The position numbers and the translations under genes are program-made. The notes under the pieces were generated by a model. That model saw only the letters and a list, made by a program, of their open reading frames with translations, ran no database searches and was not told the origin of the DNA. Below are positions 3,375 through 39,557 of a stretch of 64,000 nucleotides of DNA, in pieces; within the stretch, counting starts at the first letter, position 1; every line of letters starts with the position of its first letter. The stretch is taken from the IMG/VR virus record IMGVR_UViG_3300031951_000001, positions 186,001 to 250,000 of that record, one strand, 5' to 3'.

Positions 3375-3390
3375 ATCAAATAAGTTTTTG

Positions 3391-12300: not shown

Positions 12301-14505
12301 ATTGAATTAATCTTGAGCACAAGTCTTGTTTATTATGTTGATTCATTCGAAATTATTTACAATTTGGTATCGAATTTACCACTAACTTATTATTTTGATT
12401 TGTTCTTTACAAATACCTTGGGTACAACAATTTATGGACCATTCCCAATTGAAACTGGAGTGTCAATAAACGTTGGTGAAGTTAGTGGAACAACATCAAT
12501 AATATTTGAAATACCCCCAAGTGTTTTAGATAGAACAAGTACCTTTAGTGGATTTACTTACGACCCATATTTTTATAGCGGAACGACCCAATTAAATGTT
12601 AATACGATGTTCCCAACCCCAACCCCAACAGTAACTATAACTCAAACCCCTCAATTTGACATAACTTCAACACCAACAAGAAGCGTAACCCCAACAAGAA
12701 CTCAAACTCCAACTCAATTGGCTTGTTCGGCAACCACTTCAATTATTAATACAAACACAGCAATAGTATTATCAAGAAAGAGTGATTTGGTATATAGTCA
12801 GCAAGGAACATTGTTCTATCCTATAACATTCACTTTAAGTGGTACTAGTCCAGTATACGATGCGACATCGACAACTGTACCGGTATGGGATACATCAAAT
12901 GTTAATAACGGTCCATTAAATAGAACTGGAGTTTGGACAAACTCAGGGCAACCTGTTGATATATGGATTGGAGATACATTCTGTTTTACAAGTGCAACAG
13001 ATAACAAGAGATATTACATAGGTATTGGGGCGGATAATGACTTTAGAATCCGACTCGACGGAGTACAGATTGTAAATTCTAGTATTGGTCCGTATAATAA
13101 TACAAATATACCATTCTTGTGGTGGCACGTTTATCCTATAACTGTTAATTCAGGAGCGCATACAGTTGAGGTCTATGGTTTAAATGACAACTCAATAGGT
13201 TCATTTGGATGTGAGATTTATGATAACACTCTATCCCAATTAACCGCAGCAACTTCAGTAAGTGACCTTAATATAATTTACAGTACAAGTGCATTAACAG
13301 CGGCTACTATAGTTCAGAGTATGGCGGGAGTTTATTTATCAAGCGGGTATACTTGTCCTTCAGGTTATGAATTAGACGTGTGTAAAAACTATTGTATTAG
13401 TTATGCTAATTGTCCATCACCAACTCCTACAAATACGCCATCTAATACACCAACAAAGAGTATAACACCAACTATAAGTTTAACACCGTCAATTACCCCT
13501 ACAATAAGTTTAACACCGTCAATTACCCCTACAATAAGTTTGACGCCATCACCAACCGCGTCACCATCACCACTCATTTGTCCATATCAAGTTGGAACTA
13601 AAGGATTTGGTTCTCCTATCTATAGGATAGGTTACAATGATTATACTAATTACATTTACGTGGTTACCACTGGTGGCACGGTTGTATTAGATAGTTCGTA
13701 CTTAACTATTGATACTTATCCAAATTCATTAAGTGGTGGAAGTGTAACTTATGCTAGTATGACATTTGCGCAAAGTACTTATAAGTATGTTTATGTTGGA
13801 CATGATGGGGATTTAAAGTATGTTGATTACTATGATATAACTAACCTTACTTCAGGTATAATATCCACCACTATAGAACCAACTGAGATAGATGTAGACA
13901 GAACCAATTCTTTTATAGGAATGATAGGGGTTAATGATGAATATAAACAAATAAACATTTCAACTCAATTAGTTAACTATACTGTTAATGTTAGTGCAAC
14001 CACTAATGGTGATATCGCTTGGTCCAGACTTAATGACACGTTTTGGATTGTTTCTACTGGAGACACGATTGTGTATATTGACCCAACGGCCAAAGATATA
14101 GTTGGTACAGATACTATTCCATCAGGAGGTTATAGTGGATATGGTAAACGATTACTTTATGACAATACTAATTCTTATACGTATTTACTTGTTGATAGTC
14201 AAAGATTATTTATATATGACGCCGTAGGTTCGGCAACATCTTATGTAGATTTAACTCCATACAGTGGAACTAATACAAGTATGACAATCGATATAAATAA
14301 TAACAAACTTTATATTCTAAATGTTGATGACAATGTGTTTGGATTAATTAAGATTGACATAACAACACTAACTGATGAAGGATTATCAGTACTTGGGACT
14401 TATAGTGGTAAGTCTAACGGAAGTATACTATATGAGCCAAATAATTCTGAAATTATATTGAGTCTTGAGCCATTTACTAATACGTTCTATATATTCTGTA
14501 CTTAA
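3391..14505 (+). CDS. Giant modular virion fibre/adhesin-like protein (~3700 aa)
   Basis: The N-terminal domain is paralogous to that of the next gene and resembles BppU N-terminal attachment domains. It contains repeated Ig-like, Cys-rich and beta-propeller modules, a PA14-like domain (~12760-13350), Pro/Thr linkers and no signal peptide. ATG at 3391 is preferred over TTG at 3388. Confidence 0.65.
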   Translation: MEFVIRKNATLPLLKMQIVKDGRGTYEDFMNFIETSTIYFSMQNSETGVMKINTKFAGYVEKEFIEPNSPPEYYIYYKFTKRETNKVGKYEGQFLLKNEIGTLVLPIREKLNITIKDSNLEDDLDYNECFVGQFQCCVIGPPGPNTPYEFELNANYSPGSVIADYTLTASKPVDATTTVLFENILVTYTGESITISTGITINRGQTTSSVEVVTDGDFSNLTLANYFDNVLITPSTSLTPDSIDIKQSFPPSVLTGDCYCYRFINTQGKPAKLRYTHCNGTPVETSISPNGSYQDCIQTNQYNVSSGVIAGVSQECFGPNYLCFTAGTPCKCYRYNYIGNGAQIGQIRYVDCQNNTISDNSTDSVVELCVSERLGEKYYTHTELDATCTTEADCSFCCSASHNLVLTTGISGEIDENVTKLYRYNTLTGNQTLILTIDPVSSPPYQALDVAHKFSPITNNGKIWISFKGLNSDNLPDQYIEEYDIDSSYNVQYNRRINIPWLNGLREIGHGLSLYNENNLILTLCLFGVNEEFVLLNINNTGDIPDANLIPTGIYSPFEPTQLPNTLDSEGRVNKIVDILITSDSKIVATNYGILANGAVNTILQIDITTNDYETFFYWPDVNNYVQNSYQGIFESCGTFYCFTYSENFNELWSVDTETYELNQVQPYNSNLRVVVGCSSLLVCQTQSFVPDTPCAPDAEGCNIAITGTVHNVSFTYEYTGDVVVYSPQDNTEDSFICYEDCINVYNIEALFCGHGDGTPTPGNPSTHFTVTFNFASEVNDVRIVIWGSGWGGNENFHIMTDQGVPTITSYYSCYSEIIGNTIYSGAEPYPPYKGGGIFNVNSNNDFTSIVISGDGGWAGSFIYLCTDSSLCFDNCTPILLSPLAQITLYNGTNQYSITLPYINGGPFPNPGTSYNYNAIAHTPNKLWISNFLFTSDPTNWYLLEWDLSLCPFSVTYNTRYVQSVDSGVTSIRFGESSSPGLFALNDTTLLTSIRINQNSPQEKIVIVSLSSPLMTVVDLYSLPGQQAVSGDIIATNNFNLLVSTVDNTNTYRLLQLDFITGNLEIEVLYNIGGANIRGLFEYQGNLFATTSNGLYQINPNYPYQFTQVNATTTNQDSSSSILFCNPTYLLPPPTQTPTPTQTQTNTPSRLPLGELCRCHYITNYENKPITFTATTCDSSIPQTYTLPANTSYPPSCFKLGSVYSFNAQVTITYSITPCVFCNGKYVCNSVLCPTPTPTPTKTSTPTPTSPCQPPQVGVQTFTQAWSVNNTCVAAELGYYLFTTGTTEEACQSFVGFAETPEGSQYCPSLGTNTITPSTQQKTFGVYPYPVEIGSRLYSTVPTSCNCPSFWFNGWGGPNNDPGAPFLFLSNGPYKAWYNDGVIVNGDNTSVKIATISGCTVIDIEICEVVGFNVNIIASPGSVDMIYNFTSTQPVKSAVTINFTNILQTYTGDSIFITTGLTLNSGETSTFVTVSRDVDFDNLTLGYSTIDFSVTSNLYINPELIYFNFSIPTIPTPSNKCYCYELTNTRTDVTAIVKYRTCENEIITDYLSPLETINDCIRFNSISASSIVDITQISVCGPPDYSCVTPNVPCYCYKLTYDNSGYLGAIHYIDCAGENQSITNTTQSLYEICAREITGTFKYKADQLGECTSTTQCSQCCTTSKVLVLTNDFPNGSPGPTGVAIYNPSNGTSTLMSLTLTGLPYSLTHIYDNTTNTGRMWIAFDAPVRIEEYTLDANYNPSFDRYIFISGNEFEIGESITYLNSNTLLSTRRGTNPRRVVTIDISTPNIDITVPLVNTIYTIPLITTNADDITSLLVTTNNRLIGTRYSGTYTQNGSSNTIFQIDMNTNQLEYLATWPDVPWEGWWDGIFINCNKYYRFVNNQVSLNQLWTSSTNSNGIPTYSLVFNNNNSLSNIWDTSSNPICNTFNFNPNQILLTPTPTLTPTITKTPTKTPTPTVTKTKTPTVTPTSTDYKSDCACYTITNTSPYNSIPIFYFYRRCKTNTLTVGVVYGNTTFSDCYVPGSVTAFNNNPNLIITLGAECSDCSQGFTCNPCPSKTPTKTPTNTKTPSNTPTKSLTPTKTPTPTITPTDYPYSADCKVYSFSLITGTLYGYGVESGDIIYEMVLPVLGVPTNIAISNVSNLLFIYFSQTNLLITFQFDYITNQIIDGSLTTYDIPEPIFNPIEQNPYQSITSMDNGQGVFFTSQGYNQENLETYSLLTYELTGTITYLSDFPNGLSSKTIIRGSNNLIFALVVEQNSSDCAIQQWYCDGTFANTTLLYSFTLPLSYTNGTSIFIYDGEFYIVSQQSSPNGPHIVYTVDPYQPHTLTEVSQFTIEFGYINDSESFANCNQFEFYQYPDTPTLTPTPTLTKTPTPTRTQTSTQLTPTPTSTNLTQTPTATNLTPTPTPNCFCTSFRNTVNYDVIITFNTCDKKTKSKLLTPDGTQGSTFTTCVTDYVEDIRINVVSNGPCVSESCGSPTPTPTVTNTQTPTVTSSTGFINETPTVTPTNTETPTITPTNTETPTITPTNSSTPTMTSTNITPTPTISSTPSPIIETSILISAEYKPVPNGVNYNLVFKYNFVSNTLQPLISQSGESIQGMLSTGLAHSYDLNTNTGYVWTKSPNSSQINEYSIINSDYNTLFIRTITLTGSSYGKGLTYINDTTLISTRKIGAEQWVIEINIDPSLSSPIETLKFQVPFNQSDDYSDLMFTSTGKFIWTNNGPLGFNVEQYIYDTGELNFRAPACCTPTALWQYNGNIYSSQSGANMRIRYDLTTAEKTFICPPIGCGETSCEDPLSCICSGPCTVDFISFGGSSLVEDNNAEFVPNIDPIIINLTTTFEEGSIQITYNMVSNNPVIEAIRVNFTNVIGTQLDSWWAGEPITIDTGVTIYSGQTSGSTLVTLEDSIYDLDKTSYFTNISIYPPYLSGITTIVETNVFPTPTSTVTSTITPTPSITPSITPTNTPIFPQNIELILSTSLVYYVDSFEIIYNLVSNLPLTYYFDLFFTNTLGTTIYGPFPIETGVSINVGEVSGTTSIIFEIPPSVLDRTSTFSGFTYDPYFYSGTTQLNVNTMFPTPTPTVTITQTPQFDITSTPTRSVTPTRTQTPTQLACSATTSIINTNTAIVLSRKSDLVYSQQGTLFYPITFTLSGTSPVYDATSTTVPVWDTSNVNNGPLNRTGVWTNSGQPVDIWIGDTFCFTSATDNKRYYIGIGADNDFRIRLDGVQIVNSSIGPYNNTNIPFLWWHVYPITVNSGAHTVEVYGLNDNSIGSFGCEIYDNTLSQLTAATSVSDLNIIYSTSALTAATIVQSMAGVYLSSGYTCPSGYELDVCKNYCISYANCPSPTPTNTPSNTPTKSITPTISLTPSITPTISLTPSITPTISLTPSPTASPSPLICPYQVGTKGFGSPIYRIGYNDYTNYIYVVTTGGTVVLDSSYLTIDTYPNSLSGGSVTYASMTFAQSTYKYVYVGHDGDLKYVDYYDITNLTSGIISTTIEPTEIDVDRTNSFIGMIGVNDEYKQINISTQLVNYTVNVSATTNGDIAWSRLNDTFWIVSTGDTIVYIDPTAKDIVGTDTIPSGGYSGYGKRLLYDNTNSYTYLLVDSQRLFIYDAVGSATSYVDLTPYSGTNTSMTIDINNNKLYILNVDDNVFGLIKIDITTLTDEGLSVLGTYSGKSNGSILYEPNNSEIILSLEPFTNTFYIFCT
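10912..10980 (+). repeat. Perfect 30-bp tandem repeat (2.3 copies) in a PT linker
   Basis: ccaactaataccgaaaccccaacaattaca repeated exactly. Confidence 0.9.
13474..13541 (+). repeat. Perfect 30-bp tandem repeat (about 2.3 copies) in a PT linker
   Basis: ataagtttaacaccgtcaattacccctaca repeated exactly. Confidence 0.9.
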
Positions 14506-14578: not shown

Positions 14579-17500
14579 ATGGAATTTTTCATTAAAAAAG
14601 GCGCGACCCTTCCTTTATTAAAACTTAACATTGTTGACAATGGAAGAAGCGATTATAACAACTTTCTAAATACGTTAGAGTTGTCATCTTTATTCTTTTC
14701 AATGACTAATGTTGAAAACGGTACCCCAAAGATAACAAACAAACCTGCAGGTGTTGGCGGCGAATACCCAAACTATTTTATATACTATCAGTTTCAAAAT
14801 ACCGACACAACAAAAGAGGGTAGATTTGAGGGTGAGTTTGTTATAAAAAATGAGTACGGTAATAATGTTTTAACATTAGGTGAAAAACTTTATGTTAACA
14901 TAACCGAGTCATTTATATTAGATGATTTAGATTACGTTTCATGTTACATAGTTGATTATGCTTGTTGCAGTAATCCTATACCAGTGCCATTACCTCAACC
15001 TTCAAGTACTCCTACTCCTACACCTACTGTAACTGACTCTCAATTATCTCTAACTCTACAAGGATTTATAAATCCAGGGTCAGTTGTTATAGATTATGTT
15101 CTAACATCAAATAGATTATTTTCACAGGAACTTACAATGTCGTTCTCAAATTTACTTGGGGTGATTGTTGGAAGTCCTGTATTAATAACAACCGGTGTAA
15201 CTTTGAGTGTTGGTGAATTTACGGGAACTACCCAAGTAATTCTTCCTGATGATTTTCAAAATTTAAATCGTGAAAGTTTATTTTTTGGTAATACCATAAA
15301 TCTTACAGGTTTAACGTATACGACTTACTATCAAAATTCAGTATTCTTTGCAACACCAACACCCACCCCAACTCCAACACCAACTGAAACAATTGTTTGT
15401 GAATGTTTTGAAATTGTTGCTCCATTAGCGAATGGTTCATATTCTTATATCGATTGTAGTGGAATTGAACAACCAGTTGTTGAATTAGGTATAGGTGAAT
15501 CTTCTAGAGTTTGTGTAGGTAATTCTAAAATAAACGCGTTTGACGGAGCCGAATTCTATGTTGTTGGATTATGTTCAGACTGTCTATTACCGACCCCTAC
15601 CCCCACCCCAACTCAAACTGAGGGTGAGATTTTTATGGGTAATATAATAGAAAATATTAACCTTAATGAAACTTTTACAACGAATGAAGAAGAATTAAAT
15701 AGGATTTTACGCGAAAGACCTAAAAAATTAAATATTGATTTACCATTTAAAGATGGGGTCATAAATGTTAATCTAACTAGACGAAATATTTACGAAAATG
15801 ATTTTAGAATATCAAATGAATTCGGAGAGACACTTTATTCAAAATTAGGAGAACATTATGAAGGTATTATTGTTGGTAGTCAAAATTCTACAGTTTCTTT
15901 AAGCATTACAAGCGAAGGGTTCAGTGGGTCCTTACAAGATGAAGGATTAGTTGTTGATATTAATAACATCAGTGGATTTACTCATCACTGCCAAGAAGTA
16001 TTTGAGGAAACTAAACATGATTGTAATACATACAATATTGATTTTCCCGAATTAGATAACTACATCTCCCCAAACCAAGAAATGTTTAATAACTTTGAGG
16101 GTGAGATTATGGCTAACATTAATTTTGAGAATTTGAATTCTTACGTTACCATGGTTGCCAACAAAAACGTGAGGTATCTCTTGGAGGTTGATTACGATAT
16201 ATATCAATATTTTGGTAATGATTTACAGGCAACTACTAATTACATCACCGCGTTATTTAATTCTATATCCGCTATCCATGCCGCTGAAGGGGTGTCGATA
16301 ACAATGAGTGAGATTAAATTTTGGACTTCGGGCGAGTCTCCATATAGGACTTACGGTCATACAATACCATGCACCGCGAACACAAGTAATCTAGACTGCG
16401 CATTAAAAAATTATAGGCAATATTATAAAAATAATAATTTAACTTTCAATGGAGATGTTAGAATGTTGTTAACAGTCGGATGGCCCAATCCTGTTGGTGG
16501 TAGTGCTAGATATAGCTCGGCGTATACTCCGGGTGTGTGCTCCCCCGATTTTTATAATTGTCTTTTCCATCAGTTAAGACCAACAACTGTCAGTCCTGGT
16601 AGCCCACCTCCTGAAGGATATGTCGATGGAGGTAGTAATTTAAGTGTTTACTACGGAAATGCCAATGGGTGGAATGTAATTGCGGGTGCTCACGAAATTG
16701 GTCATACTCATGGATGTTCTCATACATTCAGTTCGGTTTGGAATTGTAACTACACAATAGGTAGCACAAATGTTGCGGGTACATGTTGTTTAGATTGTTG
16801 TTCAGGTCTTGCAAATTGCGCTTGCGTTGGCGGTACAACTATACAAAACCCAACTAACGGTACATGTATAGCGTCAGGTGCGACAATTATGTCTTATAAT
16901 ACAAGACAACCTATATTCGGACCTCAACCACAACAGAAAATGGTCAATACGATAAATGCGGCACTTTGTTTACAAAATTTTACTACACCAACCCCTACAC
17001 CAACCCCTACAAGAACAAGTACAACACCAACTCCAACTCCTACAAGAAACACACCAACTCCAACTAAAACAAGTAATTGGGATTGTGCTGCGTCTTTCAA
17101 TATAAATATTCCAAATACAACCTCAGTAACTATAAGTGGAGTAACATTCGTAAAGTCGGTATCTCAAGTGATGTCAACTCAAAGTTTTGCGATTATACCT
17201 TCGTCATGCATAGGTTCAAGTAATATTAGTGGAGTTAACATATTAACTTCTCTAACTGATACTTCGGGTAACTACACCATGAGTTCCTCGACTTTATTGA
17301 CAAGTATCGCATTATCGTTTGGGGCTTTACAAGCAACTGATGTGATTACGTTTAGTGCAAATAATGGTACTACGTTTGTCGGAATTTGCCAAGGGTGTTG
17401 TGGTCAAAATGGCGCCGCCAATCAAATTGTTGGTACAACTTTATGTAGCCAGCTCGGAAACGTAGATGGAGGTGCATTCCGAGTCATTGTTAATTCAACA

Positions 17501-18820
17501 GAACCGTTCAATCAACTAAATGTAAAAATAAGCAGTCCTTTAAATAACGGGTGGGGTAAGTTTTTAAAAATTAATAATTTTAGAACTTTAGGAACCTCAA
17601 TCACCCCAACTAAAACACCAACAAGAACTGCAACACCAACAGTTACAAAAACCGCCAATTTTGTTGACGTAACTCCAACATCGACACCTACTGTAACGTT
17701 GACTAAAACCCTTACATCCACCCCAACAAGAACATTAACACCTACAAGGACATCCACTCAAACCCCAACAGTAAGTAAAACAAGTAATTTAATTGTTGAA
17801 AGTCCGACCTCTACCCCAACAAGAACATTAACACCTACTCCGACAAGAACCCTCACACCAACTAAATCAACTAATATTACATTAACCCTCACACCAACGA
17901 GAACAAAAACCCCTACTCCGACTAAATCGTCTAATACATCATTAACACCTACTCCGACAAGAACAAAAACCCCAACACCGACAAGAACAAAAACCCCAAC
18001 ACCGACTAAATCGTCTAATACATCATTAACCCCAACACCGACAAGAACAAAAACCCCAACACCGAGTACTTCAATATCGATTTCATTGTGTGATATTTTA
18101 AGTGTTGCAAATACAACGGGTATTATATACAAATATGATTACGTATCGAATACTGTTACCGAATTGCCGGTCAGCGGTAGACAAGTATTACCGAGTGATA
18201 TTGCCGTTTCAGAAAATTATTTATTTACGATATCTTCTAACACTATTAGAAGGTTCCAAATAACTAGAAACCCATGGACCGCAACTAACCCAACCGATTT
18301 CATATATCCGTCAGGTACATTCGCAACAAGTAACAACGGTTTATTTGCATTGAGCGACTCAACACTTATATCATTTAACACTTTAAATCAAATTATATCT
18401 GTTAATTTAACCAATTTGACAACAACAGTTTTATTTAGTTTACCTGCGGGTAGGTCAATTGCGGGAGATATAATATACACAACAAACAATAGATATATAA
18501 TTGTCAACCGAAGTATATCCACATCTACCACATTTGTTTCTCAATTTGATTCATCGGGTAACCCAATGGGTGAAATGAGTATGGCAAGTATTACATTAGT
18601 TAACGGAAGTTTATTTATTTATAATAGTGAATTATATATTCAAAGGCAGTCCACCCCTCCACATAATTATAAATTAACATTCCCATCAACAATAAGTCCT
18701 GTGTTAAGTACCGCCACAGTAACATCACTAGGATTTGCTCAACCACAAAACTGTATAAGTTTTGATTTTCCTGTTTCACCAACACCTACTAAAACAGTCA
18801 CCCCGACAAAAATACTATAG
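14579..18820 (+). CDS. Modular virion fibre-like protein with an M12/reprolysin-like zinc metalloprotease domain
   Basis: HEIGHTHGCSH (HExxHxxGxxH, 16691-16723), Met-turn IMSY (16886-16897) and reprolysin-like EVDYDIY segment. It shares the N-terminal domain with 3391..14505 and has PT linkers and a C-terminal propeller. Confidence 0.75.
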   Translation: MEFFIKKGATLPLLKLNIVDNGRSDYNNFLNTLELSSLFFSMTNVENGTPKITNKPAGVGGEYPNYFIYYQFQNTDTTKEGRFEGEFVIKNEYGNNVLTLGEKLYVNITESFILDDLDYVSCYIVDYACCSNPIPVPLPQPSSTPTPTPTVTDSQLSLTLQGFINPGSVVIDYVLTSNRLFSQELTMSFSNLLGVIVGSPVLITTGVTLSVGEFTGTTQVILPDDFQNLNRESLFFGNTINLTGLTYTTYYQNSVFFATPTPTPTPTPTETIVCECFEIVAPLANGSYSYIDCSGIEQPVVELGIGESSRVCVGNSKINAFDGAEFYVVGLCSDCLLPTPTPTPTQTEGEIFMGNIIENINLNETFTTNEEELNRILRERPKKLNIDLPFKDGVINVNLTRRNIYENDFRISNEFGETLYSKLGEHYEGIIVGSQNSTVSLSITSEGFSGSLQDEGLVVDINNISGFTHHCQEVFEETKHDCNTYNIDFPELDNYISPNQEMFNNFEGEIMANINFENLNSYVTMVANKNVRYLLEVDYDIYQYFGNDLQATTNYITALFNSISAIHAAEGVSITMSEIKFWTSGESPYRTYGHTIPCTANTSNLDCALKNYRQYYKNNNLTFNGDVRMLLTVGWPNPVGGSARYSSAYTPGVCSPDFYNCLFHQLRPTTVSPGSPPPEGYVDGGSNLSVYYGNANGWNVIAGAHEIGHTHGCSHTFSSVWNCNYTIGSTNVAGTCCLDCCSGLANCACVGGTTIQNPTNGTCIASGATIMSYNTRQPIFGPQPQQKMVNTINAALCLQNFTTPTPTPTPTRTSTTPTPTPTRNTPTPTKTSNWDCAASFNINIPNTTSVTISGVTFVKSVSQVMSTQSFAIIPSSCIGSSNISGVNILTSLTDTSGNYTMSSSTLLTSIALSFGALQATDVITFSANNGTTFVGICQGCCGQNGAANQIVGTTLCSQLGNVDGGAFRVIVNSTEPFNQLNVKISSPLNNGWGKFLKINNFRTLGTSITPTKTPTRTATPTVTKTANFVDVTPTSTPTVTLTKTLTSTPTRTLTPTRTSTQTPTVSKTSNLIVESPTSTPTRTLTPTPTRTLTPTKSTNITLTLTPTRTKTPTPTKSSNTSLTPTPTRTKTPTPTRTKTPTPTKSSNTSLTPTPTRTKTPTPSTSISISLCDILSVANTTGIIYKYDYVSNTVTELPVSGRQVLPSDIAVSENYLFTISSNTIRRFQITRNPWTATNPTDFIYPSGTFATSNNGLFALSDSTLISFNTLNQIISVNLTNLTTTVLFSLPAGRSIAGDIIYTTNNRYIIVNRSISTSTTFVSQFDSSGNPMGEMSMASITLVNGSLFIYNSELYIQRQSTPPHNYKLTFPSTISPVLSTATVTSLGFAQPQNCISFDFPVSPTPTKTVTPTKIL
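17810..18065 (+). repeat. Imperfect nested tandem repeats (TPTPTRTK / TPTKSSNTSL units)
   Basis: Repeated ccgacaagaacaaaaaccccaaca and actaaatcgtctaatacatcattaac units. Confidence 0.8.
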
Positions 18821-24932: not shown

Positions 24933-26054
24933 TTAGATAACGTAAATTTGTCTTGGCATTGCTGTGAGTTTCTTAATCTTGTTAAGATTTTCAGCAATCA
25001 ACGCCTCTCTCTCCATTACTTTTTCAGGTTTAAGCCTTGTAAGACGACCTTCGGCACCTGTTAATTCTTCAATTAATTTTGTTTTTTCATCTTTGGCTTC
25101 GGTTGCTAAAGATTGATAATCCATTGTTAATTCAGAATCAGGTGTTTTGATGTTACCACTAAACTTACCACGAATTCTAGATAAAGTTTCTTTGGCGTAA
25201 GCAAAGAACCAACGACGAACCCAAATTTGAGCCGGATTATTTAAATCAACCCAATCAATTTTATTAAATGGTACATCAGAAGGTAATTTAATAATATCAG
25301 GATTATCCTTTAAACATTTATCTCTATCAGGACCACCAGCATCATAATACCAATACCATACCTTACCTCTCATCAATGTGGAGTTACCAAAGTCAAATTT
25401 ACCACCAGGTGTATTCATTAAGTGAATTGCCTTTTTACCTTCAGGTAAAGCGGTAACTCTATAAGTTAATTCACCGGCTATAATCCTTCTCTGAATATTA
25501 ATTTCCTGCATTCTTAATAACATATCGAATGCGGGCATCATAAAATATGAACCTGACATACCCATTTGTGCGAATCCACCAGGACCCCCAAAACCACCAC
25601 CACCTAAACCTCCAAAAGTCCAAGGGTCAAATAATAAGTTATTTAATTCTGATGGTGTAAACCACAACAATTCGTTTAGTTCACGACCTGCGGGTATTTC
25701 ATATATTTGTTGGTTTGGTACAAGTTGTATATAATCTTTTTGTAAAACCCAATCACCACCGGCCTGAAGACCAACTATTTTAGAATATGCGTAAGTGTAT
25801 CTTTCCTCAAAACCTTGGCTTTTAGTGATGAAAGCTTTAGCCAAAGATTGGGTATCTAAATTTAGATTATACAATGAAGTCCATTGACTCTCAATCAACC
25901 AATCTTGGATGTATTGTGAATAATCGTCAATAGATAGTTGTAAAAGTGAGTCGAGTTGCTCGTCCTCTAATTCAACACTACGTAACGGAGCTCCTAACAA
26001 GTGTTTTAATCTTGTATATAACTCACTTCTTTCTGGTTCTGCGATTACGGCCAT
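24933..26054 (-). CDS. Neck/head-completion protein (T4 gp13-like)
   Basis: N-terminal LLGAPLRSVELEDEQLD resembles gp13 LGAPxxxVE; C-terminal YAKETLSRIRGKF; TATTTATA on the minus strand at 26069-26076. Confidence 0.7.
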   Translation of the reverse strand: MAVIAEPERSELYTRLKHLLGAPLRSVELEDEQLDSLLQLSIDDYSQYIQDWLIESQWTSLYNLNLDTQSLAKAFITKSQGFEERYTYAYSKIVGLQAGGDWVLQKDYIQLVPNQQIYEIPAGRELNELLWFTPSELNNLLFDPWTFGGLGGGGFGGPGGFAQMGMSGSYFMMPAFDMLLRMQEINIQRRIIAGELTYRVTALPEGKKAIHLMNTPGGKFDFGNSTLMRGKVWYWYYDAGGPDRDKCLKDNPDIIKLPSDVPFNKIDWVDLNNPAQIWVRRWFFAYAKETLSRIRGKFSGNIKTPDSELTMDYQSLATEAKDEKTKLIEELTGAEGRLTRLKPEKVMEREALIAENLNKIKKLTAMPRQIYVI

Positions 26055-26076
26055 ATTGGTGTTTTATATATAAATA

Positions 26077-27618
26077 TCAACCCAATGTATAAATTAAATT
26101 GTTCTTATCGAATGTGTAATTACCGTCAACAATTTTTGTATCCGAGTTATCAAATACTAAAATACCATCAGGACCACCCTCAAAAATAATCCAATCAGTC
26201 GAATAAACTTTTACTTGTCCTGTATCTAACATTGAAACCAAATTTTCATCGACAACTTTAACCGTTTTATATGGTTTTATTTGAGCGGTATATTCTTCAC
26301 CATCAATAATGATGATACAATCAACACCCATTATCATGTCAGATTTGGCACCTAACTCGCCAATCTTTTTAACATTTTTGTCTCCGAATTTTTCCTTGAG
26401 TTTCTTAACTACTAAATCTTCTCTGGCGTCACCGGCTTTGTTGGTCGAACCTAATATTGCCATGACATTTTGAAATGTGCCTGACTTTGATGAAAAAATT
26501 CTGTCTTTATATTCATCGAGTATTCTAACAAATTTTTTGGTCTCACTAACTTGTTGAGCCGGTGGTAATCCGATTAATTGTAATTCGGGTCTTCTTTCAT
26601 ATCTTAATACTGAATTCAAGTCGTGATATAAAACACAGAACGCATTGTAGTTGGTATTCAGTTTGTTAATTACCGAACGTCCTCTGTTTTCTAAATCAAA
26701 AATACCCGACATAGAACCTTCGGCGTATTCCCCATTCTCATACCAATTATCAGGAAACACTGACTTTAAAATTGACTCGATACCATAACGAAATGTGTTC
26801 TTAACTGCGGGATTGATATTAAAAATCATTCTTATCTCCTCAACTTTTTCTCTCGAACATCTTTCTGACTTACCTTCAGTGATAAGTTTTTTCATAACGG
26901 TGCTCTCGTTGATTTTTGTCTTGAGTTTCATTTCGTATAGTTTATTAACAAATTCCCAATTCACAACTTTCCAAAAGTTTGAAATGTATTCGTCTCGTTT
27001 GTTTCTGTATTTCAAATAATATGCGTGCTCCCAAAGGTCTAATCCAAGTATCGGATATCCACCACCCTTAACAACATTCATTAAGGGGTTGTCTTGGTTT
27101 GGGGTTGTTAAAATCTTTAACGTGTTTCTTTTTGTAAGAACCAACCAAACCCAACCTGAACCAAAACGTTCTTTTGCTTTTTCCTCAAATTGTTTTTTGA
27201 ATTCAACATAACTACCAAAATCACTTTTTATTTTATCTAAAATCTTACCATTAGCTTTTTGTGTTTTTGGCGATAACATCTTCCAAAACAATGCGTGGTT
27301 AAATGCCCCACCGGCATTGTCTCTGACTGTTTTATTGAATCGACTAATTGATTTAACAATTTGTTCTAATTCTAAATCTCCGTAATCTTTTTTTGATAAA
27401 GCTTTGTTTAACTTTTCAACATAACCTTTGTAGTGTTTGTTGTAATGTACATCCATCGTTTCAGAATCGATGAATGATTTTAAGGATGAATAGGCGTAAG
27501 GTAATTTTTCAATACCTATGTTTTTCATTTCGGTGAGTAAAGTTTGACTCGACTCGACCTTTTCTTCTTTCAAAATTGATTTGGTTAAGGTGTCTATTTT
27601 TTTTTCTATGTTCTTCAT
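26077..27618 (-). CDS. sod: Fe/Mn superoxide dismutase fused to a C-terminal PD-(D/E)xK-like domain
   Basis: LPYAYSSL, TMDVHYNKH, NAGGAFNHALFW, FGSGWVWL, NQDNP, DLWEHAYY (all four metal ligands present). About 270 extra C-terminal aa contain GVD...TAQIK. TATTTATA on the minus strand at 27635-27642. Confidence 0.9.
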   Translation of the reverse strand: MKNIEKKIDTLTKSILKEEKVESSQTLLTEMKNIGIEKLPYAYSSLKSFIDSETMDVHYNKHYKGYVEKLNKALSKKDYGDLELEQIVKSISRFNKTVRDNAGGAFNHALFWKMLSPKTQKANGKILDKIKSDFGSYVEFKKQFEEKAKERFGSGWVWLVLTKRNTLKILTTPNQDNPLMNVVKGGGYPILGLDLWEHAYYLKYRNKRDEYISNFWKVVNWEFVNKLYEMKLKTKINESTVMKKLITEGKSERCSREKVEEIRMIFNINPAVKNTFRYGIESILKSVFPDNWYENGEYAEGSMSGIFDLENRGRSVINKLNTNYNAFCVLYHDLNSVLRYERRPELQLIGLPPAQQVSETKKFVRILDEYKDRIFSSKSGTFQNVMAILGSTNKAGDAREDLVVKKLKEKFGDKNVKKIGELGAKSDMIMGVDCIIIIDGEEYTAQIKPYKTVKVVDENLVSMLDTGQVKVYSTDWIIFEGGPDGILVFDNSDTKIVDGNYTFDKNNLIYTLG

Positions 27619-27651
27619 TTGAAGCTTATTTTTCTATAAATAAGCCGAAGG

Positions 27652-29421
27652 TTAGAATTGTCTTACAGAATTTATCTTATTCATTATTTCCTCAACTATG
27701 TCACCGGAATTTATATTATCACCCATCACGGTTTCAATATTTTTCTTCTTGTTATTAACCATATCGTAGATTATTCCTTCGATTGTATTTTCAAATATCG
27801 GATAATAAACGGAAACTGAATTTTTTTGACCGTATCTATAAGCTCTATCTTCAGCTTGTGATAAATCACCTGGCACGAATGCCAAGTCGTTTATGATTAC
27901 CGCTTCTGCGGCGGTTAGGGTAATACCAACACCTGCGGCTTTTAAGTTACCAACGAATACTTTTATCTTTTCGTTGTCTTGAAATTGGTCTACCGCATAT
28001 TGTCTTTGAGCATTACTACAACTACCATCTAAAAATACAGCTTGTTTTCCGAAGTGACTGTAAATTTTATGTAATGTATCTGTAAAGTTTGTGAATATAA
28101 TGACTTTCTTTCCTTGTTCTAAAATATTTTCAGCAATCTCGATTGTGTTATTAACCTTTTCATCGGCAATGACCTGTCTAACTTTCATTAACTTACTAAA
28201 TTGTACGGTCAATGACCCTGATTCTTCTTTTTTGTTGTCATACCAATCATAATAATCACCCATCAATGCTTCGTATTGTTTTGACCTAACACGAAGATAA
28301 ACTGGTGTAATAATCTTGTCAGGTAAATCCAACACTTCTGTCTTCAATCTACGTAAAACTTGTCTTGCTGTTCTATCTCTCAACTCCTCCAAGTTTGATG
28401 CTCCTGTCACATTCCAAACCTTCCTATTACCCGCTCTGAATTGATACCCCTGACAATATCTAATGGCAAATGCCATCCAATTTTGAGCTACAGGACTATC
28501 AATAAGATGTAATAGATTAAAATAATTCATTGGTCGTGATGTCATCGGAGTACCAGTTAATAACCACAACTTATCAACATTCTTACAGATGTGATTAACA
28601 ATCTTTGTTCTTTGAGCTTGAGCATTCTGAACATAGTGGGCTTCATCCAAAATTATCAAATCAAAGTTTGATTGTTTGATTAATGAAGTTTCTTTGTCCT
28701 TTGGGTCATGAAAGTTTTTCAATATGTCATAATTCACAATAACAAAATCATGCTCGGTCGAATATGATTTACCTTCAGAAATAAACACACTTCGGTCTGT
28801 ATAATTCTGAATCTCACGAAGCCAATTGACCTTTAACGTTGCCGGACAGACAATTAAAATCTTTTTGGCTCCCGTTTCTAAAGCCGCAATAATTGTTGAT
28901 GTTGTTTTACCCAAACCCATGTCATCGGCAAGAATAAATCTTTTACTACCTGCCAATTTTTCTATTGCTTCTTTTTGATGTTCGAGTGGAGGACGATGAG
29001 AATACTTTGAATAGTTGATATCGACTTTCTCCATTCTGTGTGACTTAATCAACGCCCCTTTCGGTAACCAAAAATCGTGAATTGTCTCACCTGAAAAAAA
29101 CTTACCCCAAACGTGATAAGCTTTCTCCTTCTCAACCAACAATTTTTCTATCCAACATTCTGTGGGTATCTCCGTATATAATTTTTCATCGGCAATTTTC
29201 TTTGCGAAGTATGGGTCCAAATCAACCCATTTTTTGGCGACCTTTGGTGATGTTTCATGAAAGGTTGTGATATATTCTGATTGAGCTCGGGTGGGGTAAA
29301 ACTTTTTATTATGTTCTTTATTGTATTTTAATTTCAGGATATAGTTGTTTGCCCCCGAATAATTTTCGAGAATGCCCAAAGCTCGTTGCTCAATCAAATT
29401 TGTCGAGGTTGAATTCAACAC
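27652..29421 (-). CDS. SNF2-family (HARP/SMARCAL1-like) helicase/ATPase
   Basis: LADDMGLGKT, DEAH, LTGTP, AAGVGITL, QAEDRAYRYGQ. The true start is likely GTG 29421 or TTG 29418 because the 29466 start overlaps the divergent gene. Confidence 0.9.
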   Translation of the reverse strand: MLNSTSTNLIEQRALGILENYSGANNYILKLKYNKEHNKKFYPTRAQSEYITTFHETSPKVAKKWVDLDPYFAKKIADEKLYTEIPTECWIEKLLVEKEKAYHVWGKFFSGETIHDFWLPKGALIKSHRMEKVDINYSKYSHRPPLEHQKEAIEKLAGSKRFILADDMGLGKTTSTIIAALETGAKKILIVCPATLKVNWLREIQNYTDRSVFISEGKSYSTEHDFVIVNYDILKNFHDPKDKETSLIKQSNFDLIILDEAHYVQNAQAQRTKIVNHICKNVDKLWLLTGTPMTSRPMNYFNLLHLIDSPVAQNWMAFAIRYCQGYQFRAGNRKVWNVTGASNLEELRDRTARQVLRRLKTEVLDLPDKIITPVYLRVRSKQYEALMGDYYDWYDNKKEESGSLTVQFSKLMKVRQVIADEKVNNTIEIAENILEQGKKVIIFTNFTDTLHKIYSHFGKQAVFLDGSCSNAQRQYAVDQFQDNEKIKVFVGNLKAAGVGITLTAAEAVIINDLAFVPGDLSQAEDRAYRYGQKNSVSVYYPIFENTIEGIIYDMVNNKKKNIETVMGDNINSGDIVEEIMNKINSVRQF

Positions 29422-29427
29422 ATTATA

Positions 29428-29456
29428 AAAATAATAAACAATTCGATATTTATCAA
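29428..29456. promoter_or_regulatory. Overlapping divergent promoters: TTGATA-N17-TATTTT (minus, helicase) and TATTTATC (plus, 29447-54, neck gene)
   Basis: Both motifs are read directly in a ~36-nt intergenic gap. Confidence 0.5.
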
Positions 29457-29457
29457 T

Positions 29458-29973
29458 ATGGGACAACCGAGAGTACCAATATCAAGGATAGGAAAATTTT
29501 TTGGAGTTGAGGATTTCGACTTGGATATCTCTATGGGTGAGGAATGGTTACACGGTGATATGAATTTCACACTTGTTCTATACCGTGTGGATAGACAAAA
29601 AACCAAAACCGATGATGTATATGGAGAGGCTTTAATGGATGGAATAAAGTTTTTACCACCCGTAGAATTCAAAGCATTTGTACAAATCATGGCCCCTGAA
29701 AACAAATATTTAGGTAACTCAAAGATTGACCAAGTTGAGCCAGGTAACATTAGAATATCGGTGTATCAAAAACAGTTAGATGAACTTGAGATTGATATTA
29801 ATTACGGTGATTACATTGGTTATTATGAAACTGAAAATCGTGTTAGATATTATGTGGTCAACAATGATGGTCGTGTAATTTCTGATAATAAACATACATA
29901 CGCTGGGTACAAGCCATTCTATAGAACAATTATGGCGTCTGCCGTTGTAGATAACGAATTTAGAGGATTATGA
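29458..29973 (+). CDS. Head closure/neck protein (T4 gp14-like)
   Basis: DDVYGE motif and GDYI segment; positioned before the tail terminator and sheath genes. Confidence 0.55.
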   Translation: MGQPRVPISRIGKFFGVEDFDLDISMGEEWLHGDMNFTLVLYRVDRQKTKTDDVYGEALMDGIKFLPPVEFKAFVQIMAPENKYLGNSKIDQVEPGNIRISVYQKQLDELEIDINYGDYIGYYETENRVRYYVVNNDGRVISDNKHTYAGYKPFYRTIMASAVVDNEFRGL

Positions 29974-39526: not shown

Positions 39527-39557
39527 CAAGTCATCTATTTATAATAAAGTTTAATTG

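What the first reader, a model, noticed from the sequence alone, without database searches (positions are those of the whole stretch)
26077..27618. Superoxide dismutase fused to a restriction-endonuclease-like domain, with candidate protease-cleavage linkers
Seen: a complete Fe/Mn-SOD (~27515-26935), a linker KINESTVMKKLITEG, then a ~270-aa domain with E...GVD-x9-AQIK (26275-26328) resembling the Mrr-type PD-(D/E)xK variant (D...QxK). The gene has a late motif and sits beside the neck gene. The leader (ILKEE, LLTE) and linker (INE, LITE) match the (I/L)xE specificity of T4-type prohead proteases. Inference: a head-packaged polyprotein is cut into an SOD and a nuclease-like protein, both injected to counter oxidative stress and attack host or competitor DNA.
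Basis: partly seen in the sequence, partly recalled or inferred. Interest (0 to 1): 0.8.

Follow-up and report, generated by a model that had tools for sequence, protein, structure and literature searches.

The report
Phage superoxide dismutase fused to nuclease-fold module
An uncultured 322-kb jumbo phage encodes an intact superoxide dismutase spliced into the N-terminal leader of a phage-only protein with a restriction-endonuclease fold, and conserved T4-type protease sites flank the dismutase, so it is probably packed into the phage head and cut apart there, though this has not been shown.

Summary
ORF 26077-27618(-) encodes 513 aa in three parts. First comes a conserved ~36-aa leader. Next is a complete Fe/Mn SOD with all four metal ligands. 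Last is a ~265-aa module: a helical half with no known relative, then a ~120-aa PD-(D/E)xK-fold core. That core is closest to archaeal Hjc resolvases (Z 8-9) and carries a near-invariant E...D-x5-D...QxK signature.

The module is a new, virus-only family with no Pfam, PHROG or NCBIfam match. I found 370 clusters, most of them standalone proteins. It is not an Mrr or gp4 member by sequence.

In related phages the same slot, just upstream of the gp13-like neck gene, holds either the SOD fusion or a 294-aa form. The 294-aa form keeps the leader but has no SOD. A second paralog sits between the prohead protease and the scaffold gene.

The genome encodes a T4 gp21-type protease. The capsid protein has LINE|A aligned to T4's known cleavage site. 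The only conserved non-catalytic (I/L)xE sites of the fusion (E30, E238, E248) fall in the only three low-confidence segments of the model.

So processing by the prohead protease and packaging in the head are plausible. Neither is shown, and injection and nuclease activity are untested. The 'late' status of the upstream motif is also not established.

The parts
27635..27642 (-). Promoter-like motif TATTTATA, 24 nt upstream of the ATG
   Evidence: The 8-mer occurs upstream of 51 ORFs against 3.4 expected; the TATTTAT core occurs upstream of 102 of 350 ORFs. These include the gp13-like, scaffold-like and terminase genes, but also many small non-structural ORFs. Its timing class is not shown.
27511..27618 (-). 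N-terminal leader, residues 1-36: predicted helix of low confidence with consensus MK-x-(I/L)-E-x-K-(I/V)...(F/L)(L/I)xE-MKKIGIE
   Evidence: Conserved in 63 SOD fusions. Its first ~15 residues are kept in the 294-aa orthologues that lack SOD. pLDDT is 46-60, and below 50 at residues 19-33 and 36-39.
27529..27537 (-). Candidate protease site L28-T-E30 (cut would follow E30)
   Evidence: [IL]xE is kept in 59 of 63 fusions, and the site lies in a segment with pLDDT below 50. Cleavage is inferred, not shown.
26923..27510 (-). Fe/Mn superoxide dismutase domain, residues 37-232; ligands H58, H108, D194, H198
   Evidence: Pfam Sod_Fe_N and Sod_Fe_C. NCBIfam SOD[Mn] 2e-57 and SOD[Fe] 1.6e-50. The ligands are invariant in 44 fusions, and their coordinates were checked.
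26860..26922 (-). Inter-domain linker, residues 233-253, with candidate sites I236-N-E238 (26905-26913) and I246-T-E248 (26875-26883)
   Evidence: The two sites are kept in 56 and 60 of 63 fusions. pLDDT is below 50 at residues 235-249. The 8-mer KLKTKINE is identical to the end of the N-terminal variable segment of a 441-aa head-module protein, where [ILV]xE precedes an invariant mature N-terminus.
26437..26859 (-). Helical subdomain of the module, residues 254-394, with invariant GRSV-x-NKLNTNY, C254 and C328; no known relative
   Evidence: AF2 pLDDT is about 90. No structural match covers it. N318 is kept in 79 of 83 and N335 in 81 of 84 family representatives.
26080..26436 (-). PD-(D/E)xK (restriction-endonuclease) fold core, residues 395-513; signature E400, D427, G431, D433, Q446-x-K448
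   Evidence: VIA-align gives Hjc 2wcw Z 9.0 with 101 of 121 residues aligned. In an unbiased search of 48,161 chains, nearly all of the listed matches over this core are nucleases of this fold, best Z 8.3. Foldseek probabilities are 0.9-1.0. D433 sits at the start of one strand, Q446-x-K448 in the next strand and E400 in the preceding long helix.
24933..26054 (-). Downstream neighbour: gp13-like neck/adaptor gene, 22 nt after the stop codon and with its own TATTTATA motif
   Evidence: phrog_211 Ad2 at 1.9e-10. Orthologues carry PF26809 Phage_T4_gp13. The order helicase - X - gp13 - ~110-aa ORF is conserved, with PolB on the opposite strand.
27652..29466 (-). Upstream neighbour: SNF2-family helicase
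   Evidence: Pfam SNF2-rel_dom 1e-30 and Helicase_C 3.8e-18. Syntenic in L004-L007.

Best explanation
The gene encodes a virion-directed pre-protein of a distant T4-like jumbo myovirus. It has a ~30-aa N-terminal leader, an active-looking Fe/Mn SOD, and a phage-specific module made of a novel helical subdomain plus an Hjc-like PD-(D/E)xK core with an E-D-D-QxK site.

Shown:
- The domain content.
- The fold of the C-terminal core.
- Strict conservation of the putative metal-binding and catalytic residues.
- Orthology with an SOD-less 294-aa gene at the same slot upstream of the gp13-like neck gene. That form keeps the leader, so SOD sits inside the leader region of an older protein.
- A second paralog between the prohead protease and the scaffold gene.
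- A gp21-type protease and a gp23-type capsid protein in the genome.

Inferred: the leader acts like the capsid-targeting propeptide of the T4 internal proteins and Alt. The pre-protein would enter the prohead core, and the gp21-like protease would cut after E30, E238 and/or E248. That would free SOD and the nuclease-fold module, which would stay in the filled head and leave with the DNA.

More speculative: in the newly infected cell, SOD lowers superoxide and the module acts on DNA.
For: - SOD domains and ligands.
- AF2 model of the module, pLDDT 89.3.
- PD-(D/E)xK matches: Foldseek prob 0.9-1.0, Z 9.0 and 8.3 to Hjc.
- Signature residues 97-100% conserved (E400 93%) among 127 distant representatives.
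- Synteny with the SOD-less orthologue. Leader retained in it.
- One change of state on the tree of 110 orthologues.
- Paralog in the head cluster: hhalign prob 95.3, E 2.2e-8; family HMM E 2.5e-28. Neighbours there are portal, protease and MCP.
- S77 protease.
- MCP LINE|A aligned to T4 gp23 LTE|A.
- Conserved [IL]xE only at residues 28-30, 236-238 and 246-248, plus the buried SOD active-site DLWEH. These coincide with the only pLDDT < 50 segments, 19-33, 36-39 and 235-249.
- The 441-aa head-module protein has a variable ~43-aa N-terminus ending [ILV]xE before an invariant APIDYEGPERM in about 60 homologues. It shares KLKTKINE and KKL(V/I)TEG with the SOD linker.
- [IL]NE[SAG] is about 6-fold enriched in head-module ORFs.
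- Precedents from the literature: T4 capsid-targeting propeptides carry diverse natural and engineered cargo, including nucleases, into heads and then into cells, with processing by gp21 (PMC9026906). PBCV-1 packages a late-expressed SOD in its virion (PMC7019647).
Against: - There are no proteomic, expression or biochemical data; no cultured relative exists.
- No other ORF of the genome shares the leader by HMM.
- More distant members of the module family lie in non-structural contexts, so head association is not a property of the whole family.
- [IL]xE is a short motif in a K/E/I/L-rich proteome (1231 occurrences).
- The P1' residue after E30 is Met, which is atypical for T4.
- The gene follows a helicase gene and faces PolB, so its module assignment is ambiguous.
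- The upstream motif is not specific to late or structural genes.
- Q in place of E/D at the catalytic position could mean altered or lost catalysis.
Confidence: 0.4

Rival explanations
1. The protein is an unprocessed enzyme that acts on DNA at the packaging or head-completion step. The REase-fold module would be this lineage's functional stand-in for the T4 gp4 head-completion nuclease, or for a junction-resolving or debranching nuclease such as T4 endonuclease VII or Hjc. It would be co-expressed with the neck proteins. SOD would be an auxiliary domain that happened to fuse to it.
For: - The gene is 22 nt upstream of the gp13-like neck gene, and this arrangement is conserved.
- The genome has no detectable gp4 (phrog_218, PF08722) or gp2 (phrog_429) at E <= 1, although it has gp13-, gp20-, gp21- and gp23-like genes.
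- T4-like 'group 2' jumbo phages normally carry an REase-fold head-completion nuclease (PMC7824862).
- The best structural matches are Holliday-junction resolvases.
Against: - Profile-profile comparison with the gp4 family gives probability 0.12%.
- gp4/TnsA-type proteins are not among the top structural hits.
- This reading does not explain the conserved leader kept after SOD loss, the conserved [IL]xE sites in flexible segments, or the second paralog between protease and scaffold.
- It gives no rationale for fusing SOD to the module.
Confidence: 0.27
2. The module is a non-catalytic DNA-binding or structural protein built on a nuclease fold. It might hold or protect DNA inside the capsid or at the portal. 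The invariant polar residues would bind DNA or metal without cleaving DNA. SOD would ride along as a passenger.
For: - Q446 is strictly kept (124 of 127) and is never E or D, unlike most active PD-(D/E)xK enzymes.
- There is an extra invariant helical subdomain of unknown role.
- The genes sit near head and neck genes.
Against: - E400, D427, D433 and K448 are conserved at 93-100%, which is typical of a working metal site.
- QxK variants are known in active enzymes of the Mrr type (general knowledge, not tested here).
- No structural evidence bears on the question.
Confidence: 0.15
3. The protein is a cytoplasmic auxiliary or counter-defence enzyme with no link to the virion. SOD would keep the infected cell productive under oxidative stress, and the nuclease would degrade host or competitor DNA. 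Leader and linker would be oligomerisation or spacer helices.
For: - Phage-encoded SODs without virion association are common.
- Distant members of the module family lie among non-structural genes.
- The paralog evolves faster than its neighbours (81-89% against 84-98% identity), which suits a conflict gene.
Against: - The position with the neck genes is conserved, and a paralog sits in the head cluster.
- Spacer segments would not be expected to keep exactly the protease-type tripeptides found at the MCP and 441-aa protein boundaries.
Confidence: 0.15

Closest known systems
Fe/Mn superoxide dismutase (Pfam PF00081 + PF02777; SodA/SodB)
   Same: Both domains are full length, with all four metal ligands and the DxWEHAYY motif. 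It is about 50% identical to bacterial SodA-type enzymes.
   Different: It is embedded between a 36-aa leader and a 280-aa C-terminal extension. It scores below NCBIfam's equivalog cut-offs for both the Mn and the Fe enzyme, so metal specificity is undetermined.
Archaeal Holliday-junction resolvase Hjc/Hje and related small PD-(D/E)xK nucleases (I-Ssp6803I, NhoI, RecU)
   Same: The core fold over ~100 aligned residues (Z 7-9). The acidic and lysine residues sit in the same places: E in the first helix, D at the start of a strand, and xK 13-15 residues later in the next strand.
   Different: Sequence identity is only 8-16%, with no sequence-level family match. It has QxK instead of ExK and an extra invariant Asp (D427). 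After the catalytic hairpin the region is all-beta. It is preceded by a 140-aa helical subdomain with no counterpart.
T4 internal proteins and Alt (capsid-targeting propeptide, gp21 processing, ejection with the DNA)
   Same: A short N-terminal leader starts with MK and ends in (I/L)xE. A gp21-type protease is in the genome. The cargo behind the leader is modular and variable. The enzymes would be delivered with the DNA (PMC9026906).
   Different: There is no sequence homology to IPI-III or Alt. The leader is about three times longer than T4's 10-residue signal. Two enzymes sit in one precursor. Packaging and processing are inferred only.
T4 gp4 head-completion nuclease (PF08722 TnsA-like, phrog_218)
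   Same: It has a restriction-endonuclease fold, sits with head-completion and neck genes, and the genome has no other gp4 candidate (PMC7824862).
   Different: No detectable homology (hhalign probability 0.12%). It is twice the size, has a different motif (QxK-P against ExK-P), and has a leader plus candidate cleavage sites.
Virion-packaged Cu/Zn SOD of chlorovirus PBCV-1 (A245R)
   Same: A virus-encoded SOD proposed to act at the very start of infection (PMC7019647).
   Different: It belongs to an unrelated SOD family, comes from a eukaryotic virus, and is not fused to another domain. Its packaging was shown experimentally, which is not the case here.

Membership tests
Fe/Mn superoxide dismutase | N-terminal alpha-hairpin and C-terminal alpha/beta domains both above the Pfam gathering scores | tested here: met
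   PF00081 scores 77.8 bits (cut-off 27) and PF02777 scores 137.5 bits (cut-off 20.9).
Fe/Mn superoxide dismutase | Four metal ligands (His, His, Asp, His) and the gateway His/Tyr | tested here: met
   H58, H108, D194 and H198, plus H62 and Y66, are invariant in 44 fusions.
Fe/Mn superoxide dismutase | Superoxide dismutation activity | not testable with these tools
   Needs an enzyme assay.
PD-(D/E)xK (restriction-endonuclease-like) superfamily | Core alpha-beta-beta-beta fold | tested here: met
   The model has pLDDT 89. Hjc gives Z 9.0 and 8.3, and nearly all listed matches over this core in the search of 48,161 chains are nucleases of this fold.
PD-(D/E)xK (restriction-endonuclease-like) superfamily | Acidic residue at the start of strand 2 and (D/E/Q)xK in strand 3, with a helix-1 Glu | tested here: met
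   D433 precedes strand 434-438, Q446-x-K448 lie in strand 441-450 and E400 lies in helix 380-411. Conservation is 93-100%. Side-chain geometry was not inspected.
PD-(D/E)xK (restriction-endonuclease-like) superfamily | Metal-dependent phosphodiester cleavage | not testable with these tools
   Needs a nuclease assay with D433A and K448A controls.
Mrr-type restriction endonuclease (PF04471 Mrr_cat) | Match to the family profile | tested here: not met
   No Pfam hit at E <= 0.1 for the window protein or at E <= 0.01 for 10 other members. Only the QxK variant is shared.
Archaeal Holliday-junction resolvase (Hjc) | Sequence-profile membership and junction-specific cleavage | tested here: not met
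   No Pfam or NCBIfam hit and no PDB sequence hit. Only the fold is similar. Junction cleavage is untested.
T4 gp4 head-completion nuclease (PF08722 / phrog_218) | Homology to the gp4 family | tested here: not met
   hhalign of A1 against the gp4 alignment A3 gives probability 0.12%. There is no phrog_218 or PF08722 match anywhere in the genome.
T4-type prohead-core cargo (internal proteins, Alt) | A gp21-type (S77) protease encoded by the same phage | tested here: met
   PF03420 scores 87.3 bits, above its cut-off. It is 34% identical to T4 gp21 and matches phrog_207 at 2.8e-43.
T4-type prohead-core cargo (internal proteins, Alt) | N-terminal propeptide ending in (I/L)xE in an exposed segment | tested here: inconclusive
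   Sites at E30, E238 and E248 are conserved and lie in segments with pLDDT below 50. The motif is short, and no cleavage data exist.
T4-type prohead-core cargo (internal proteins, Alt) | Presence in proheads or virions and ejection into the host | not testable with these tools
   There is no cultured relative and no proteome.

The most novel reading that the evidence does not exclude
A lineage of uncultured jumbo phages has a natural cargo slot inside a cleavable capsid-targeting propeptide. An intact SOD was inserted there (and later lost in one sublineage), between gp21-type cleavage sites and ahead of a new family of QxK nuclease-fold head proteins. Each virion would then deliver a ready-made antioxidant enzyme and a DNA-acting enzyme together with the genome. 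This would be the first phage shown to package an SOD. It would also be a natural counterpart of the engineered T4 expression-packaging-processing system.
Probability: 0.3. Interest if true: 0.8.

Novelty: new variant of a known kind. Interest (0 to 1): 0.6.

Why it matters
Phage SODs are usually read as auxiliary metabolic genes made inside the infected cell. This SOD is spliced into the leader of a protein tied to head and neck genes. It is bracketed by the same tripeptides that mark maturation cleavage in the capsid protein. That points to delivery with the virion, which would put an antioxidant enzyme in the cell at the moment of DNA entry.

The C-terminal module also defines a large, virus-only and so far unannotated PD-(D/E)xK family. 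It has 370 clusters at 50% identity, an invariant E-D-D-QxK site and an unknown helical partner domain. The family occurs in several copies in jumbo and mega-phages. Naming it would improve annotation of many metagenomic phage genomes.

The hypothesis is directly testable with recombinant protease and substrate, without needing the unknown host.

Tried and rejected
1. Mrr membership: no profile hit. Rejected as a family assignment; only the QxK variant is shared.
2. gp4 head-completion nuclease homology: single-sequence and profile-profile comparisons both give probability about 0.1%. gp2 likewise.
3. PDB sequence search with the family profile: only a chance hit at E 0.95.
4. PHROGs, NCBIfam and PADLOC give nothing for the module. 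The language-model atlas gives no informative neighbour.
5. A shared leader among other ORFs of the genome: the HMM finds only the query itself. One ORF starts with a similar heptapeptide.
6. Head-module context as a general property of the family: not so. Distant members lie next to PhoH, ClpP, HNH and M16 peptidase genes, or in tandem pairs.
7. Sigma-70 promoters and intrinsic terminators around the gene occur no more often than in shuffled sequence.
8. The 'late' label for the TATTTATA motif: the motif is real and enriched, but not restricted to structural genes.
9. Cultured relatives that might have a virion proteome: none found by DNA or protein search of 50,697 phage records.
10. Searching the related records behind L004 and L006 for the paralog and the protease: those records are not held.
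11. Direction of the SOD gain or loss: the tree needs one event, but the outgroup branch is too long to root it.
Full report
**Where the window lies.** The window is bases 186001-250000 of a 322,372-bp IMG/VR virus record that CheckV rates as complete. G+C is about 34%. The phage is a distant T4-like jumbo myovirus. In the window I find PolB, an SNF2 helicase, a gp13-like neck/adaptor protein, tail sheath, tail tube and baseplate hub. Elsewhere in the genome are a large terminase, a portal, a gp21-type protease and a gp23-type major capsid protein. DNA and protein searches of 50,697 phage records found no cultured relative.

**The observation.** ORF 26077-27618(-) encodes 513 aa.
- Residues 37-226 match both Fe/Mn SOD Pfam domains far above threshold. 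They also match NCBIfam's Mn and Fe SOD models.
- The four ligands H58, H108, D194 and H198 and the second-sphere residues H62 and Y66 are invariant in 44 full-length homologues.
- The fusion is not an assembly artefact. Dozens of distinct 509-519-aa homologues from independent metagenomes share the architecture.

**The C-terminal region.** I aligned residues 235-513 with 30 homologues (A1) and modelled the region with AlphaFold2. Mean pLDDT is 89.3. The model has two parts.
- Model residues 20-160 (protein ~254-394) are helical. They matched nothing in PDB, AFDB, BFVD or the ESM Atlas apart from the protein's own family.
- Model residues ~160-279 (protein ~395-513) match PD-(D/E)xK nucleases throughout.
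  - Foldseek hits are I-Ssp6803I, Hjc and NhoI, at probability 0.9-1.0 with modest E-values.
  - VIA-align gives Z 9.0 to A. fulgidus Hjc, with 101 of 121 residues aligned.
  - An independent search of 48,161 PDB chains returns nucleases of this fold for nearly all listed matches over this core (Hjc 8.3, Hje 7.5, NhoI 7.4, I-Ssp6803I 7.1, HhaI 6.9, RecU, DpnI, tRNA-splicing endonucleases).
  - A Z of 8-9 alone is middling by the tool's own calibration. The uniformity of the hits and coverage of the whole small domain make the fold assignment solid.
- E400 lies in the long helix. D433 immediately precedes a strand. Q446-x-K448 lie in the following strand. This is the canonical placement.
- A profile search of 1.84 billion representatives found 370 clusters at E <= 0.001. 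Among 127 that cover the motif, D433 and K448 are invariant, Q446 is 124/127, D427 is 121/122, G431 is 122/125 and E400 is 110/118.
The spacer between GVD and AQIK is 11 residues, not 9.

**What the module is not.**
- Pfam, PHROGs, NCBIfam, PADLOC and a PDB sequence search all fail to match it. That includes Mrr_cat.
- T4 gp4, the REase-fold head-completion nuclease (PF08722; PMC7824862), is not detectably related (hhalign probability 0.12%).
- The family is confined to viral contigs and uncultured phages, including a 634-kb megaphage.
- Most members are standalone proteins of 240-300 aa. Some carry other N-terminal regions with no Pfam match, giving totals of 403, 583, 597 and 1109 aa.
- The module is thus the constant part and the N-terminal partner is what varies.

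**Context and evolution.** In related contigs the order SNF2 helicase - X - gp13-like - ~110-aa ORF, with PolB on the opposite strand, is conserved.
- X is either a 512-aa SOD fusion (L006, L007) or a 294-aa protein without SOD (L004, L005).
- The 294-aa form keeps the first ~15 leader residues and the segment corresponding to the linker. SOD therefore sits inside the N-terminal leader region of the module protein.
- A maximum-likelihood tree of 57 fusions and 53 standalone orthologues needs only one change of state. The standalone forms are one shallow clade (support 85/100) beside deep, diverse fusion lineages. This favours a single loss of SOD, but the outgroup branch is too long to fix the root.
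- The genome has exactly one further paralog, a 318-aa ORF at G000:C1:118104-119060. It matches at hhalign probability 95.3 and E 2.2e-8 over 202 columns, and at E 2.5e-28 with a family HMM.
- That paralog lies between the prohead protease and an acidic scaffold-like ORF, just upstream of the MCP. It keeps E, D-x-x-x-G-x-D and QVKP.

**The protease hypothesis.**
- The genome encodes a Peptidase_S77 (T4 gp21) homologue. It scores 87 bits, above the cut-off, and is 34% identical to T4 gp21.
- The MCP is a gp23 homologue (E 5e-25). Its N-terminus aligns LINE60|A with T4's FLTE65|A. That gp23 is cut by gp21 is stated in the T4 record; the exact position, after E65, is general knowledge, and the rule that T4-type prohead proteases cut after Glu in a short motif is in PMC9026906.
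- The fusion has ten [IL]xE tripeptides against 6.4 expected. Only four are conserved across 63 homologues. One is the buried SOD active-site DLWEH. The other three are L28-T-E30 (59/63), I236-N-E238 (56/63) and I246-T-E248 (60/63).
- A full-length AF2 model (pLDDT 79.8) has pLDDT below 50 in only three segments: 19-33, 36-39 and 235-249. The conserved sites thus lie in the presumably flexible joints between leader, SOD and module.
- A 441-aa protein encoded just upstream of the terminase shares the 8-mer KLKTKINE and the KKL(V/I)TEG motif with the SOD linker. In about 60 of its homologues, a variable ~43-aa N-terminus ends in [ILV]xE and is followed by an invariant APIDYEGPERM. This is the pattern expected of a removed propeptide.
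- [IL]NE[SAG] occurs 22 times in the proteome, and six of these are in head-module ORFs that make up about 4% of it.
- Together these results make (I/L)xE processing in this lineage credible, and they make the fusion a plausible substrate.
- They do not show that the protein enters proheads. No other ORF shares the leader by HMM. Distant family members sit in non-structural contexts.

**Regulation.** TATTTATA lies 24 nt upstream of the ATG (window 27635-27642). The motif is strongly enriched upstream of ORFs: ATATTTAT occurs before 66 ORFs against 3.8 expected. It precedes the gp13-like, scaffold-like and terminase genes and the giant ORFs. It also precedes arrays of small ORFs of unknown function. 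It is a promoter-like element, but its timing class is unknown. Sigma-70-type promoters and intrinsic terminators are not enriched.

**Interpretation.** I rate four readings.
- The best reading (0.4) is that the protein is a head-directed precursor cut by the gp21-like protease into SOD and a nuclease-fold protein. This parallels the T4 internal proteins and Alt, whose propeptides target diverse cargo into the prohead and are removed by gp21 (PMC9026906). A virus-packaged SOD has a precedent in chlorovirus PBCV-1 (PMC7019647).
- The main rival (0.27) is an unprocessed nuclease acting at packaging or head completion. It would replace the missing gp4 or act as a junction resolvase.
- A non-catalytic DNA-binding role (0.15) and a purely cytoplasmic auxiliary or counter-defence role (0.15) remain open.

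**Verdict.** The architecture and the module family are new, but they are built from known kinds of parts. I therefore rate it a new variant of a known kind, with interest 0.6.

Noticed in passing
L028:5580-6902 (+) = G000:C1:110580-111905, outside the window: A 441-aa protein encoded just upstream of the large terminase belongs to a very large family (more than 3,400 hits at E <= 1e-5, no Pfam). Its variable ~43-aa N-terminus ends in [ILV]xE and is followed by an invariant APIDYEGPERM. This looks like a propeptide removed by the prohead protease. It shares KLKTKINE and KKL(V/I)TEG with the SOD linker.
   Followed up: partly
L003:2360-3313 (+) = G000:C1:118104-119060, outside the window: A 318-aa paralog of the nuclease-fold module lies between the prohead protease and the acidic scaffold-like gene. 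In close relatives it is less conserved (81-89% identity) than the flanking portal, protease and MCP genes (84-98%).
   Followed up: partly
L028:4619-5575 (+) = G000:C1:109619-110578: A 319-aa ORF in the head region starts MNIEKKI, close to the MKNIEKKI of the SOD fusion. It contains two copies of a ~35-aa proline- and lysine-rich repeat. It may share a targeting signal, or the match may be chance.
   Followed up: no
whole genome; in the window e.g. 27635-27642 (-) and about 26070-26077 (-): The promoter-like motif (A)TATTTAT(A) lies upstream of 102 of 350 ORFs at two preferred distances (about -12 and about -22). It is the reverse complement of the T4 late -10 element TATAAATA (the T4 element is from general knowledge).
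   Followed up: partly
window 3388-14505 (+), 14579-18820 (+), 39555-44585 (+): Giant ORFs of 3705, 1413 and 1676 aa lie in the structural region. The 1413-aa and 958-aa ORFs hit only PHROGs of unknown function.
   Followed up: no
L004:5054-7960 and L005:5054-7960: In relatives, the SNF2 helicase upstream of the module gene is 968 aa instead of 604 aa and has a faint LAGLIDADG_3 hit. This suggests an intein or homing-endonuclease insertion.
   Followed up: no
L027:4170-4760 and 5001-5729: A more distant viral contig carries two tandem copies of the module (about 30% identical to the 318-aa paralog), with no head genes within the ~10-kb locus examined.
   Followed up: no
G000:C1:122699-126558 (downstream of the MCP) and L013:1999-2919: Several ORFs begin with lipoprotein- or secretion-type signal peptides typical of Bacteroidota. 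A contig with a family member encodes PorP_SprF. These hint at a Bacteroidota host.
   Followed up: no
L011:8001-11330: A 1109-aa protein with the module at its C-terminus and an unannotated 850-aa N-terminal region is followed by an M16 peptidase gene and a peptidoglycan-binding protein gene.
   Followed up: no
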